The notes below the pieces were generated by a model. The model saw only the letters and a program-made list of their open reading frames with translations. It had not been told where the DNA came from and did not search any database. Position numbers and translations under genes: made by a program. From Wallemia ichthyophaga EXF-994 (lineage: Eukaryota; Fungi; Basidiomycota): a DNA stretch of 32,000 nt. The stretch covers positions 116,107-148,106 of the forward strand of contig NW_008806279.1 of assembly GCF_000400465.1 (NCBI RefSeq). Reading direction: 5' to 3'. Positions 15,526-18,160 of the stretch are shown here, piece by piece. How positions within the stretch are numbered: the stretch's first letter is position 1; every line of letters begins with the position of its first letter.

Positions 15526-16683
15526 ATGGAAGAGTTTATTAAATTGGCTAAAAACAAAAAATTAAATTTACCCGCAGAGGCTTTTAATGATAGTCCATTT
15601 ATGGCTATTTGTGGGATTCTTGCAATTCACAAGCGAGCGCTGAGTCCATTAGAGATTGCAAAGGAGCTTAAACAGAGGAATTGGAGTGGATTTAGTGGAA
15701 ACGCACCAGCTACCTCGATAAATAATATATTTCGTCACAGGGAATCAACAAATATTATCAGAAAGCATAAATTATCTGGTACTGCGAATGATGATAAAAT
15801 TCTCCCTCACATTGGCATCTCTTCAAACGTATCTACTAAATCAAATAGAGCAGGCGTAATTTACTTTTTAAACTGTGAAATTTTTGATCAGAAATCTCCT
15901 TGGGAAGCCGCAGGTGTTATAGATCCATATAGGAGCTCCAAACCTACACACAGTTCAAACCCTTCAAATCCAACAAAGAGAAGATTTTCAGACAGAATAA
16001 CTAATCAACCAATCAAATCTAGAAAATTAACGAAGTACCCGATTTCACCTGCTAACAGTGATCATGAAGATAAAAACCCACAAACACATCGTAGACTGAG
16101 ATCTAATCACACCGTCGACATGAACCTTGACCTCTTGGATGACTTACCAAAACCATCCTCAAAACCTAAGAATAGGTCAAATAAACCTGCAGTCGTCAGT
16201 GATAATCCTGTTCTTACTCCTCCTTCACCTCCCCAATCTCAAACTTCTCAACAACAAGACGATGACTTTCTGGTTTCAATCATGTCACCTTCGGATAACT
16301 TTTCAGATCCACCAGGCTCACCAGACTTACCAAAGTCACCAGGAAGCACCGACCAAAACGCCCACCAAAACACCAATTACCAACCACATAAATCTACAAA
16401 ACTTGCCAGCATGTCATCACTCGAGAAAGAACTCGATGAACTATCACCGCTATCCAACCAAATGGATTGCGTTGAGTCGAAAGATGACGTCATATGCAAC
16501 TTAGCCACTCCACCACTGTCACCAAGACTATCTGACGATTTATCAGTCGATGCTCTCGAAGAGCTAGACACTCTTTGGACACACCAAGTTAATCGCACTC
16601 GCAGAGCAGATAGCTTGGTTGACAGAGACCTTTTCAACAGCTTGAACTATGTTGAATCTATCAGAGCTGCAGCTAGGCAGTAA
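15526..16683 (+). CDS. GDS1-like protein: N-terminal winged-helix (HARE-HTH-like) domain with a Ser/Pro-rich disordered tail
   Basis: AICGILAIHKRALSPLEIAKELKQRNW...APATSINNIF and KHKLSGTANDD...AGVIYFL resemble basidiomycete Gds1-type WH domains (recognised from memory). Basic NLS-like segments are present. Confidence 0.55.
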   Translation: MEEFIKLAKNKKLNLPAEAFNDSPFMAICGILAIHKRALSPLEIAKELKQRNWSGFSGNAPATSINNIFRHRESTNIIRKHKLSGTANDDKILPHIGISSNVSTKSNRAGVIYFLNCEIFDQKSPWEAAGVIDPYRSSKPTHSSNPSNPTKRRFSDRITNQPIKSRKLTKYPISPANSDHEDKNPQTHRRLRSNHTVDMNLDLLDDLPKPSSKPKNRSNKPAVVSDNPVLTPPSPPQSQTSQQQDDDFLVSIMSPSDNFSDPPGSPDLPKSPGSTDQNAHQNTNYQPHKSTKLASMSSLEKELDELSPLSNQMDCVESKDDVICNLATPPLSPRLSDDLSVDALEELDTLWTHQVNRTRRADSLVDRDLFNSLNYVESIRAAARQ

Positions 16684-16874: not shown

Positions 16875-17379
16875 TTAGCTAGTCAGAACTGTTGTGAGGG
16901 TTGTTTGTGAGTGTGTGAGAGCAGAAGCCAGCCAGCACTCACGCGTAAGAACGACGTCTCCGTGGAGTTTAGCCTGTGTGAGAGTGTGAGATGAGCCCGC
17001 TTATCCCACAGACAACTCATTGATGTAAATTTCGAGGTCCTGCGCTTGTCTCAGTTTGTGCTCTCCTCGTCTTCTAGCTTTCTGCTTACCAAGTTGAGAT
17101 CGAGACGCAGTCCGAGTGCATCATCTCTCTCTTCCTCCTGCGTGACATTTCTACTCTCTTTGAGTGGCCCGCCGTTCTTGTCGGCGGTGAGGTCCGTGTG
17201 TGTGGGACCGATAGCCTGTCTGCCGAGTTCTGCGTAGCTGTCGGAGTGTGAGCGTGTACTTGTGCATTGAAGTATGCCTATGTGATCCTATTCGTACTCC
17301 ACACTCACCTTTCCATCAATCCCCTGTCGATTCTGCTAACATCGACATTCTCTTTCTGTTTGCCTTTCTCAAGCGACAT
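16875..17379 (-). CDS. Uncharacterised small protein (about 94 aa), paralogue A, 5 exons, contains an AT-AC intron; absent from the ORF track
   Basis: Exons 17379-17309, 17237-17090, 17039-17021, 16975-16943 and 16888-16875. Three introns are GT-AG and one is AT-AC. Product: MSLEKGKQKENVDVSRIDRGLMESYAELGRQAIGPTHTDLTADKNGGPLKESRNVTQEEERDDALGLRLDLNLDLEIYIKAKLHGDVVLTLLTS*. Confidence 0.8.
16976..17020 (-). other. Predicted AT-AC intron (45 nt) with a U2-like donor
   Basis: Minus-strand sequence ATGAGTtgtctgtgggataagcgggctcatctcacactctcacAC. Removing it gives atc a|ag gct aaa ctc cac gga gac (IKAKLHGD). Confidence 0.8.
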
Positions 17380-17557
17380 GCTTCTGCTTAGCGTATTGAT
17401 GCTTGCTAATGGCTAAAAAGCGTCTGGAAGTTCCCCTCGGCCAAGGCAGGGGGGTGACGTACAGGATGTGAAAAATTGACTTCATTTGAACGAAGGAATA
17501 AATCATCAATGTCATGCCTAAATCGTTACAAATGTGGTGCTATAGCTATCCTTGAGC

Positions 17558-18160
17558 CTATGCGAGAAGCTTGAGGCACACATCGCCGTGCAGTTTCGCC
17601 TGTGAAGTGATATGAGTGAGAAGGAGGCTGTGCAGCGCAGCACTTATTGATGAATATCTCCAATTCTAAATTGAGGTCTGTGTCTATGTGAATATGTGCG
17701 TTGATACAATCTACTCACACCCACCGAGTCTCAGCGATATGGGATTGTTGCCTTTGTCGTTCTTTTTGCCGGTCTGAACGGCACCTTGAACGCCCTGGAC
17801 TGCTTGTACGGCTGGCTGAGCAACACTGGTAGCTTCTTTAAGAACGTCCAGTGGCTGCTGAGTTACATCGACCGTCTTGCTGGCTGTGTCGACGACTTGG
17901 CCAGTCGTGTTGATAACGTTGGTGGCATCAGAGAATGTCCCAGGAGCTGATTTCTTGCGTTGCTTGCGTGGTGCATTCTTCTTGGCTGGCTGGGTTGGCT
18001 GCGATGGGTTTCCTTGCTGTGAATCCTCTACAGTCTCAGCAGCCGCCTCAACCGTCTGGTTCGGTGAAACAAGCGTCTCATTTACCTCATACTCGCTATC
18101 AGATGCACTTAAAGAGTAGTCGACTTCTTCTGCCATTTCTGTCTTACCGTTTGAGCTCAT
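17558..18160 (-). CDS. Uncharacterised protein (about 169 aa), paralogue B, 3 exons, contains an AT-AC intron; low-complexity N-terminus
   Basis: Exons 18160-17725, 17677-17648 and 17601-17558, with a GT-AG intron at 17678-17724. The C-terminus ...ISLRLDLNLELEIFIKAKLHGDVCLKLLA* matches paralogue A. Confidence 0.8.
17602..17647 (-). other. Predicted AT-AC intron (46 nt) with a U2-like donor
   Basis: Minus-strand sequence ATAAGTgctgcgctgcacagcctccttctcactcatatcacttcAC. Removing it gives atc a|ag gcg aaa ctg cac ggc gat (IKAKLHGD). Confidence 0.8.

What the first reader, a model, noticed from the sequence alone, without database searches (positions are those of the whole stretch)
16875..18160. 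Tandem paralogues both need an AT-AC intron with a U2-type donor at the same codon
Two adjacent minus-strand genes share the C-terminal motif LRLDLNL(D/E)LEI(Y/F)IKAKLHGDVxLxLL. In both, the Lys codon is split a|ag by an intron that starts AT and ends AC (45 and 46 nt, normal sizes here). No GT-AG or slid junction restores the frame. The donors ATGAGT and ATAAGT match the usual GTGAGT/GTAAGT except at the first base, and they lack the U12 consensus ATATCCTT. The minor spliceosome is generally considered absent from Dikarya, so these would be major-spliceosome AT-AC introns, a very rare class. The intron interiors have diverged and no other intron position is shared between the copies, yet both AT and AC termini are kept. 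That argues for selection on the non-canonical ends rather than sequencing error. This is the best candidate for an undescribed system in the window.
Basis: partly seen in the sequence, partly recalled or inferred. Interest (0 to 1): 0.9.

Follow-up and report, generated by a model that had tools for sequence, protein, structure and literature searches.

The report
Conserved AT-AC introns in Wallemia genes
Two neighbouring genes of the salt-loving fungus Wallemia ichthyophaga each contain a short intron that starts with AT and ends with AC instead of GT and AG; it is real and conserved, but it belongs to a rare intron class that is already described, and its main practical effect is to break automatic gene annotation.

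Summary
The window is Wallemia ichthyophaga EXF-994. Both minus-strand genes exist as described. Each needs a 45- or 46-nt AT...AC intron (17020-16976 and 17647-17602) that splits a Lys codon a|ag.

I found the same intron in 13 distinct copies from 7 Wallemia-type lineages. All read A|AT..GT...AC|AG, while the intron interiors are close to random similarity. Third codon positions vary in both flanking exons, and the encoded peptide does not.

Only the AT-AC junction gives the fixed 9-residue spacing (..LKAK.HGD) seen in 122 of 129 homologues from across fungi. One relative has an intron-less copy that reads FVKAKIHGD without interruption. The deposited W. mellicola models of both genes use this junction.

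The donors are mostly ATAAGT, a near-perfect U1/U6 match, and differ from the U12 donor at 4-5 of 8 positions. Published surveys find no minor spliceosome in Basidiomycota. These are therefore type II (U2-dependent) AT-AC introns, a rare but described class.

One claim is wrong. A 36-nt GT-AG intron does restore the frame in gene B, and GenBank uses it, but it is not conserved.

No cDNA could be examined. Verdict: a new member of a known kind, of modest interest.

The parts
17558..18160 (-). Gene A (GenBank J056_003891, mis-modelled there): 169-aa protein with a disordered N-terminus and the conserved C-terminal block ISLRLDLNLELEIFIKAKLHGDVCLKLLA. Exons 18160-17725, 17677-17648 and 17601-17558.
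   Evidence: Spliced translation. The orthologous W. mellicola model of 171 aa has the same structure. The GenBank model P0007 retains the AT-AC intron and has a frameshifted tail.
17678..17724 (-). Gene A intron 1: ordinary GT-AG intron of 47 nt (GTGGGT...CAG), phase 1 in the Asp codon of LRL|D.
   Evidence: It is present in all 7 lineages.
17648..17677 (-). Gene A 30-nt micro-exon encoding (D)LNLELEIFI(K).
   Evidence: Variation in the upstream coding stretch tested (the last 18 nt before the split Lys codon, both copies pooled) is concentrated at third codon positions.
17602..17647 (-). Gene A AT-AC intron of 46 nt: ATAAGTGCTGCGCTGCACAGCCTCCTTCTCACTCATATCACTTCAC. It splits the Lys codon a|ag. 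Branch-like CTCAC/CTCAT lies at 17620-17612, with the A 15 or 11 nt from the 3' end.
17558..17601 (-). Gene A last exon: (K)AKLHGDVCLKLLA plus the stop codon.
   Evidence: The peptide AKLHGDV is invariant, and 7 of the 8 variable columns are third codon positions.
16875..17379 (-). Gene B (GenBank J056_003890, mis-modelled there): 94-aa protein ending ...LGLRLDLNLDLEIYIKAKLHGDVVLTLLTS. Exons 17379-17309, 17237-17090, 17039-17021, 16975-16943 and 16888-16875.
   Evidence: The orthologous W. mellicola model P0002 is reproduced exactly with the AT-AC junction.
17021..17039 (-). Gene B 19-nt micro-exon encoding DLEIYI(K).
16976..17020 (-). Gene B AT-AC intron of 45 nt: ATGAGTTGTCTGTGGGATAAGCGGGCTCATCTCACACTCTCACAC. 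It splits the Lys codon a|ag. Branch-like CTCAT/CTCAC lies at 16995-16986, with the A 16 or 11 nt from the 3' end.
16974..17009 (-). Competing 36-nt GT-AG intron used by the GenBank annotation of gene B. It gives ...IYINELSAKLHGD. It is probably not the real junction.
   Evidence: Reproduced. The GT is not conserved, and W. mellicola has an in-frame TAG there. It would give a 12-residue spacing against the family's 9.
16889..16942 (-). Gene B last intron: ordinary GT-AG intron of 54 nt.

Best explanation
Both genes carry a true spliceosomal intron with AT-AC termini of the U2-dependent ('type II') kind.

Shown: the intron sits at the same codon in both tandem copies. Its AT and AC ends are invariant in 13 copies from 7 Wallemia-type lineages, while the interior drifts freely. 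Removing it at A|AT...AC|AG is the only junction that keeps both flanking coding frames and also the fixed spacing of the protein family.

Inferred mechanism: U1, and later U6, pair with positions +2 to +6 of the donor. These read UAAGU in 10 of 13 copies, a better match than the GT donors of the same genes, much as GC-AG introns compensate for their weak +2 position. U2 pairs with a YUNAY branch site whose A lies 10-11 nt upstream of the 3' end in the twelve 44-47-nt introns. In the second catalytic step, the non-Watson-Crick contact normally made by the first and last G of an intron is replaced by an A-C contact. As a result, an intron that starts with A ligates at the AC rather than at the AG 2 nt downstream.

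The intron was most likely already present when the C-terminal domain was duplicated in tandem in the Wallemia lineage. It is absent from the agaricomycete homologues and the one intronless homologue that I examined.
For: (1): only these junctions give the 169-aa and 94-aa proteins that end in the shared motif.
(2): W. mellicola, W. hederae, two further genomic lineages (Logan assemblies) and two lineages from metagenome assemblies all have A|AT[AGT][AGT]GT...AC|AG in copy B and, in six lineages, also in copy A. That makes 13 distinct introns of 44-77 nt.
(3): interior identity is 0.58-0.66, against 0.52 +/- 0.06 for shuffled sequence. Flanking exons are 0.77-0.83 identical.
(4): variable columns by codon position are 1/1/6 upstream and 1/0/7 downstream, with the peptides unchanged.
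(5): among all in-frame, stop-free junction offsets, only (0,0) AT-AC, and its 1-nt slide that gives the same mRNA, has invariant termini and leaves the length unchanged.
(6): 122 of 129 motif-bearing proteins have exactly 9 residues between LNL and [ILV]HGD, mostly ..LKAK. AT-AC gives 9 with K, AA-AG gives 8, and the GenBank GT-AG gives 12.
(7): the intron-less copy A of a divergent relative reads GTC AAA GCT AAA ATT CAT (FVKAKIHGD) without interruption.
(8): the deposited W. mellicola CBS 633.66 model of gene B is reproduced exactly with the AT-AC junction, and the gene A model of 171 aa matches it in length and span.
(9): donors are xTAAGT in 10 of 13 AT-AC introns against 2 of 26 GT-AG introns of the same genes (Fisher p=2e-5; not corrected for shared ancestry). 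There are 4-5 mismatches of 8 to the U12 donor ATATCCTT, and no TCCTTAAC branch motif.
(10) PMC10639083 and PMC11347168: no minor introns or minor snRNAs in Basidiomycota.
(11) PMC1557818: a G1-to-A change is rescued by changing the last G to C in yeast and human U2-type introns. Natural type II AT-AC introns exist and are retained in paralogous gene families.
Against: No cDNA or RNA-seq junction could be inspected with these tools. No transcript-derived protein with the spliced sequence is in the searched collection. I could not verify that the W. mellicola models rest on ESTs. cDNA alone cannot tell A|AT..AC|AG from AA|TA..CA|G. The minor spliceosome was excluded from the intron sequences and from published surveys, not by scanning the whole Wallemia genome. 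The counts across lineages are not phylogenetically independent.
Confidence: 0.8

Rival explanations
1. The introns are U12-type AT-AC introns, removed by a minor spliceosome that survives in Wallemiomycetes.
For: The AT-AC termini are typical of one subclass of minor introns. The branch-like A lies 10-11 nt from the 3' end, which falls in the range usual for U12 introns.
Against: The donors differ from ATATCCTT at 4-5 of 8 positions. The best matches to TCCTTAAC have 2-4 mismatches and lie at inconsistent distances. GT-AG introns in the same genes have similarly short branch-to-3' distances. Two surveys found no minor introns or minor snRNAs in Basidiomycota. Rfam found no snRNA in the window, though that is uninformative for the genome as a whole.
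Confidence: 0.02
2. The database gene models are right and there is no AT-AC intron. Gene B uses the 36-nt GT-AG intron 17009-16974. Gene A retains the sequence and ends in a different tail.
For: The GenBank models P0001 and P0007 are reproduced exactly by these structures.
Against: That annotation came from GeneMark-ES ab initio prediction (PMC3849046). The GT is present in only one of the 13 introns. W. mellicola has an in-frame TAG before any GT, and 6 of 12 introns have no canonical in-frame alternative at all. The resulting INELS insertion gives a spacing of 12 rather than 9. The frameshifted tail of gene A discards an exon whose peptide is invariant while its third positions vary.
Confidence: 0.03
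3. A different non-canonical junction is used: AA-AG (3 nt longer, which drops the Lys), a 2-nt slide that gives Asn instead of Lys, or the TA-CA description of the same mRNA.
For: AA-AG termini are also invariant in 12 of 12 introns, and the intron would end in a normal CAG. TA-CA cannot be told apart from AT-AC at the cDNA level.
Against: AA-AG gives an 8-residue spacing, against 9 in 122 of 129 homologues, and its donor would be AATAAG. The 2-nt slide has variable donor dinucleotides (AA, GA, AG, AT). The W. mellicola models and the intron-less copy have Lys at this position. The invariant G at +5 and T at +6 fit the U1/U6 register only if cleavage is at A|AT.
Confidence: 0.05
4. The pattern is a sequencing or assembly artefact, or the genes are decaying pseudogenes whose last exons are no longer used.
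For: None beyond the unusual termini.
Against: The same termini occur in independent assemblies of seven lineages. These include isolate genomes, Logan assemblies and metagenome assemblies from different samples, one of which carries a single nucleotide change inside the intron. The downstream exon is under clear purifying selection.
Confidence: 0.01
5. The sequence is a non-spliceosomal or structure-guided intron, as in euglenid nonconventional introns, whose ends are brought together by RNA pairing.
For: The termini are non-canonical.
Against: The folding energy of the introns with 10-nt flanks is no better than that of shuffled sequence (mean z = -0.25; GT-AG control introns -1.17), and no shared stem joins the ends. 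The donor and branch motifs are of the spliceosomal type.
Confidence: 0.01

Closest known systems
Type II (U2-dependent) AT-AC introns, e.g. human SCN4A/SCN5A and human/Drosophila TAF2 (Sheth et al. 2006, PMC1557818)
   Same: AT and AC termini on an otherwise ordinary U2-type donor (/ATAAGT). No U12 motifs. Conserved in orthologues and kept in paralogous copies after gene duplication. Very rare, at 0.003-0.008% of introns in animals.
   Different: The host is a basidiomycete with very short introns (44-47 nt, and 77 nt in one relative), most of which lack a polypyrimidine tract. The AC is always followed by an exonic AG. Dependence on the major spliceosome is inferred here, not shown.
AT-AC junctions reported in other Dikarya: about 0.03% of introns in RNA-seq-guided models reported for A. 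niger, P. chrysosporium and T. lanuginosus (PMC4084796), and hypothesised AT-AC II introns in fungal xylanase genes (PMC1557818)
   Same: The same class in the same fungal subkingdom, which has no minor spliceosome.
   Different: Those are counts or single-gene suggestions. Here the same intron is followed through 13 copies and 7 lineages and is tied to a conserved peptide spacing.
Yeast and mammalian splice-site suppression genetics: a G1-to-A block of the second step is rescued by changing the last G to C (cited in PMC1557818)
   Same: It gives the mechanism by which an A...C pair of terminal nucleotides can replace G...G in the major spliceosome.
   Different: Those were engineered mutants that splice less efficiently. 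These are natural introns maintained by selection.
U12-type AT-AC introns
   Same: The terminal dinucleotides.
   Different: The donor (/ATATCCTT) and branch (TCCTTAAC) motifs are absent, and the machinery is reported to be absent from Basidiomycota.
GC-AG introns
   Same: A non-consensus donor dinucleotide is compensated by a stronger match over the rest of the 5' splice site (xTAAGT in 10 of 13 here).
   Different: GC-AG introns keep G at +1 and AG at the 3' end, so no change of the terminal nucleotide pair is needed.

Membership tests
Type II (U2-dependent) AT-AC introns | The intron begins with AT and ends with AC at the junction that gives the functional mRNA. | tested here: met
   Searches show it is the only junction with invariant termini and unchanged length. 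Searches show that the family spacing and the intron-less copy require it. One search shows the deposited W. mellicola models use it. It was not verified on cDNA.
Type II (U2-dependent) AT-AC introns | The 5' splice site matches the U2-type consensus apart from position +1. | tested here: met
   ATAAGT 10 times, and ATGAGT, ATAGGT and ATATGT once each. G at +5 and T at +6 are invariant.
Type II (U2-dependent) AT-AC introns | No U12-type donor or branch-point motif. | tested here: met
   4-5 of 8 mismatches to ATATCCTT, and no consistent TCCTTAAC match.
Type II (U2-dependent) AT-AC introns | The termini are conserved in orthologous genes. | tested here: met
   13 distinct introns in 7 lineages.
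Type II (U2-dependent) AT-AC introns | Splicing depends on U1, U2, U4 and U6 and not on U11, U12, U4atac or U6atac. | not testable with these tools
   This is inferred from the motifs and from the published absence of the minor spliceosome in Basidiomycota.
U12-type (minor) AT-AC introns | A highly conserved /ATATCCTT donor. | tested here: not met
U12-type (minor) AT-AC introns | A TCCTTAAC branch site 10-15 nt from the 3' end. | tested here: not met
   the best matches have 2-4 mismatches and lie at scattered distances.
U12-type (minor) AT-AC introns | Minor snRNAs and minor-specific proteins are encoded in the genome. | not testable with these tools
   Only the window and short loci could be scanned (nothing found). 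The literature reports none in Basidiomycota.
Euglenid-type nonconventional introns | The intron ends are brought together by a stable RNA secondary structure. | tested here: not met
   mean z = -0.25, and no shared end-joining stem.

The most novel reading that the evidence does not exclude
The arrangement may be more than a passive rare variant. In all 13 copies the AC is followed by an exonic AG: the split Lys codon is AAG 13 of 13 times, while the next Lys codon is AAA 9 times and AAG 4 times. The donor is also held at the optimal UAAGU. This could mean the 3' end works as a two-part signal, with a normal YAG used for early recognition and the AC 2 nt upstream chosen at ligation because the intron starts with A. 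If so, the intron would be an inherently slow or checkpointed splicing event. It may have been preserved since before the tandem duplication because it regulates output of a conserved pan-fungal small protein, for example under osmotic stress in these xerophilic and halophilic fungi.
Probability: 0.15. Interest if true: 0.55.

Novelty: new member of a known kind. Interest (0 to 1): 0.3.

Why it matters
The finding gives a clean, comparatively well-supported natural example of a major-spliceosome AT-AC intron in a basidiomycete. It is retained in two tandem paralogues and through the divergence of the genus. That makes it a convenient natural substrate for asking how a short-intron fungal spliceosome selects AC over an AG 2 nt away.

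In practice it explains why every ab initio annotation of these two genes is wrong. The reference W. ichthyophaga annotation and dozens of W. ichthyophaga and W. mellicola strain annotations show an inserted peptide, a frameshifted tail, a skipped micro-exon or an A-B fusion protein. This shows that gene finders for fungi should allow AT-AC junctions.

It also brings to light an uncharacterised small-protein family, found across fungi, with a nearly invariant 26-residue C-terminus and no Pfam model.

Tried and rejected
- Pfam scans of both window proteins and of five family members found no family.
- The Rfam and tRNA scans of the window found nothing.
- I looked for transcript-derived proteins that carry the spliced junction. 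None is in the 90%-identity clusters or among their members, so there is no direct cDNA evidence.
I used deposited Wallemia models instead.
- A 32-aa motif alignment was too short for the word-indexed search. I repeated it with 46-aa segments.
- A full-text search for the peptide motif found no paper.
- The supplements of the W. ichthyophaga genome paper do not list these genes.
- An AlphaFold model of the W. mellicola gene B protein with a 50-sequence alignment was of low confidence (pLDDT 56, pTM 0.17). It showed no regular structure in the conserved C-terminus, so I did no fold search.
- Folding of the intron RNA showed no special structure.
- I considered scanning the window for further ATRAGT...AC introns and dropped the idea. 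Without transcripts or homology, the expected chance matches (my rough estimate is tens per 64 kb of both strands) could not be separated from real introns.
- I rejected recent gene conversion between copies A and B as the reason for the shared termini, because A-versus-B interior identity is at the shuffled level.
Full report
**Identity of the window.** Both genes match Wallemia ichthyophaga EXF-994 (GCA_000400465.1, scaffold KE007229.1) base for base. The closest proteins are the hypothetical proteins J056_003890 and J056_003891 of that genome, followed by homologues from W. mellicola and W. hederae.

**What is in the sequence.** The coordinates below are for the minus strand.
- Gene A has exons 18160-17725, 17677-17648 and 17601-17558 and encodes 169 aa ending ISLRLDLNLELEIFIKAKLHGDVCLKLLA.
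- Gene B has exons 17379-17309, 17237-17090, 17039-17021, 16975-16943 and 16888-16875 and encodes 94 aa ending LGLRLDLNLDLEIYIKAKLHGDVVLTLLTS.
- The two proteins are related only in this C-terminal block: 22 of 31 residues are identical, E=3e-14.
- To join ..EI[FY]I to AKLHGD.. in frame, each gene needs an intron that begins AT and ends AC. In gene A it is 17647-17602 (46 nt). In gene B it is 17020-16976 (45 nt). Both split a Lys codon a|ag.
- The other introns of the two genes are ordinary GT-AG introns at positions the copies do not share. Gene A is split in LRL|D at phase 1, and gene B after LNL at phase 0.

In gene B a 36-nt GT-AG intron (17009-16974) also restores the frame. It is exactly the structure behind the GenBank protein, which reads ..IYINELSAKLHGD.. 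(P0001, reproduced). The GenBank model of gene A simply retains the AT-AC intron and runs into a frameshifted tail (P0007). That annotation was made ab initio with GeneMark-ES (PMC3849046). In addition, the intron starts with A and the next exon also starts with A, so A|AT..AC|AG and AA|TA..CA|G give the same mRNA. AA-AG junctions are also in frame. The real question is therefore which in-frame junction is used.

**Comparative evidence.** I fetched the orthologous tandem locus from these sources:
- W. mellicola CBS 633.66 (L001) and W. hederae (L002);
- two further genomic lineages from Logan assemblies (L004, L005-7);
- two lineages from metagenome assemblies (L008/9, and the more divergent, AT-rich L014/15).

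Every copy B, and copy A in six of the seven lineages, has A|AT[AGT][AGT]GT...AC|AG at the same codon. That makes 13 distinct introns, of 44-47 nt and 77 nt in L014.

The intron interiors are barely more similar than shuffled sequence. Orthologue identity is 0.58-0.66 and A-versus-B identity is 0.58, against 0.52 +/- 0.06 for shuffles. The flanking exons are 0.77-0.83 identical. In the flanking exons the variable columns fall at codon positions 1/2/3 as 1/1/6 upstream and 1/0/7 downstream, while the peptides do not change. Both flanks are therefore translated in the stated frames, and sequencing error and pseudogene decay are excluded.

I then enumerated every donor and acceptor offset that is in frame and stop-free in all 12 Wallemia introns. 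Only AT-AC (with its 1-nt slide that gives the same mRNA) has invariant terminal dinucleotides and leaves the product length unchanged. Canonical GT-AG or GC-AG alternatives exist in only 6 of 12 introns and add 3 or more residues, which breaks the family spacing described below.

**Evidence from the protein family.** A profile search of 1.84 billion representative proteins found 146 members at E<=0.001. A second search attached names from Rhizopus, Sporodiniella, Hypoxylon, Coprinopsis, Armillaria, Lentinula and Guyanagaster, so the family spans the fungi. It has no Pfam model, and the text search found no literature on it.
- In 122 of 129 motif-bearing proteins the distance between LNL and [ILV]HGD is exactly 9 residues, usually ..x[LI]KA[KR]. 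The exceptions include the mis-modelled Wallemia entries, with spacings of 2 and 12.
- The AT-AC junction gives 9 residues with Lys in the consensus position. AA-AG gives 8, and the GenBank GT-AG gives 12.
- Three agaricomycete homologues have no intron at this codon. Their only intron is a GT-AG intron just after LL. One further homologue (GCA_016758985.1, organism not identified here) is intronless.
- In the divergent relative L014, copy A has lost or never had the intron and reads GTC AAA GCT AAA ATT CAT = FVKAKIHGD without interruption. Its copy B keeps a 77-nt AT-AC intron.
- The deposited W. mellicola CBS 633.66 model of gene B is reproduced exactly only with the AT-AC junction. The gene A model (171 aa, 606-nt span) fits two 45-nt introns, one of them AT-AC.

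**Which spliceosome.**
- The donors are ATAAGT (10 of 13), ATGAGT, ATAGGT and ATATGT. G at +5 and T at +6 are invariant.
- They differ from the U12 donor ATATCCTT at 4-5 of 8 positions, and no TCCTTAAC branch motif is present.
- A YTNAY element with its A 10-11 nt from the AC is present in the twelve Wallemia introns. L014 has a CTTAC followed by a long pyrimidine tract.
- The donors match xTAAGT much more often than the 26 GT-AG donors of the same genes (10 of 13 against 2 of 26, p=2e-5, not corrected for shared ancestry). This is the same kind of compensation described for GC-AG introns (PMC1557818).
- Two pan-eukaryotic surveys report no minor introns or minor snRNAs in Basidiomycota (PMC10639083; PMC11347168).
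- The introns have no special secondary structure.

The best reading is therefore splicing by the major spliceosome, with an A-C pair of terminal nucleotides replacing the usual G-G pair in the second step. That substitution is known to work in yeast and human U2-type introns (cited in PMC1557818). This step is inferred, not shown.

**Comparison with what is known.** Type II (U2-dependent) AT-AC introns are an established, very rare class. There are 15 in human, 6 in mouse and 3 in Drosophila. They are conserved in orthologues, and most of the human ones lie in a single expanded paralogous gene family. They have been hypothesised in xylanase genes of filamentous fungi (PMC1557818). RNA-seq-guided models of three fungi, one of them the basidiomycete P. 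chrysosporium, contain about 0.03% AT-AC junctions (PMC4084796). A survey of fungal annotations also lists AT-AC as a rare combination (PMC7072748). This is therefore not an undescribed system. It is a new, unusually well-documented member of a known kind.

**Origin.** The intron is shared by both tandem copies in six lineages. It is absent from the agaricomycete homologues and the one intronless homologue that I examined. It most likely arose in the Wallemia lineage before the C-terminal domain was duplicated, and was later lost from copy A in the L014 lineage. Transfer by gene conversion cannot be excluded, but nothing in the intron interiors suggests a recent event.

**What remains open.** No transcript data could be examined. 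The split Lys codon is AAG in 13 of 13 introns, whereas the next Lys codon is AAA 9 times and AAG 4 times. This hints that the AG right after the AC is itself constrained, but the sample is small and not phylogenetically independent. The function of the protein family is unknown. A structure prediction was uninformative.

**Verdict.** The interpretation as major-spliceosome AT-AC introns is well supported. The claim of novelty is not supported. Interest is modest: a useful natural example and a clear cause of recurrent mis-annotation.

Noticed in passing
window 16875-18160; proteins P0001, P0007-P0013 and P0263-P0279: Every ab initio annotation of these two genes is wrong in a different way. 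The reference has an INELS insertion in gene B and a frameshifted tail in gene A. Dozens of W. ichthyophaga and W. mellicola strain annotations skip the micro-exon (..LDLNLAKLHGD..) or fuse A and B into chimeras of 221-282 aa.
   Followed up: yes
window 17558-17677 and 16943-17039 (the C-terminal motif); homologues P0016-P0262: The genes belong to an uncharacterised small-protein family found across fungi. Members have a low-complexity N-terminus and a nearly invariant C-terminal L[RK]LRLDLNLD.E..LKA[KR]IHGD.TL.LL with fixed spacing. There is no Pfam model and no paper was found. AlphaFold gave only a low-confidence model.
   Followed up: partly
window 17021-17039 and 17648-17677; L014 1545-1556 and 1706-1716: The AT-AC intron is flanked by very small exons. 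They are 19 nt in gene B and 30 nt in gene A, and 12 nt and 11 nt in copy B of the divergent relative. These genes are therefore cut into micro-exons by introns of about 45-77 nt.
   Followed up: partly
window 17601-17600 and 16975-16974 (first two exon bases after the AC): The split Lys codon is AAG in all 13 intron-bearing copies. The next Lys codon, two codons on, is AAA 9 times and AAG 4 times, and the intron-less copy uses AAA. The AG just after the AC may therefore be under selection as part of the 3' splice signal.
   Followed up: partly
L014 585-1120 and 1272-1873 (also L015, L016): This is an AT-rich relative (31% GC over the contig) known only from metagenome assemblies, and it has the same tandem pair. 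Its copy A has no intron at the Lys codon. Its copy B has a 77-nt AT-AC intron with a long pyrimidine tract and extra GT-AG introns. The organism was not identified.
   Followed up: partly
L011 1710-1776, L012 1725-1773, L013 1740-1806: The three agaricomycete homologues examined have a GT-AG intron in the second Leu codon of the terminal LL, a few bases before the stop. Many metagenome ORF calls for family members end ..LLYV or ..LLSV, which suggests that they read into such an intron. The last intron of Wallemia gene B lies 4 nt away from that position.
   Followed up: no
window 15526-16683 (+): An uninterrupted 385-aa ORF lies convergent with gene B, with the 3' ends about 190 nt apart. Its W. 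mellicola counterpart carries a weak PF25318 (WHD_GDS1) hit. The flanking synteny (RRF, L37, L31, gene A, gene B, GDS1-like gene, V-ATPase subunit a) is the same in the W. ichthyophaga and W. mellicola loci, and the W. hederae and other Wallemia loci are consistent with it where genes were called.
   Followed up: no
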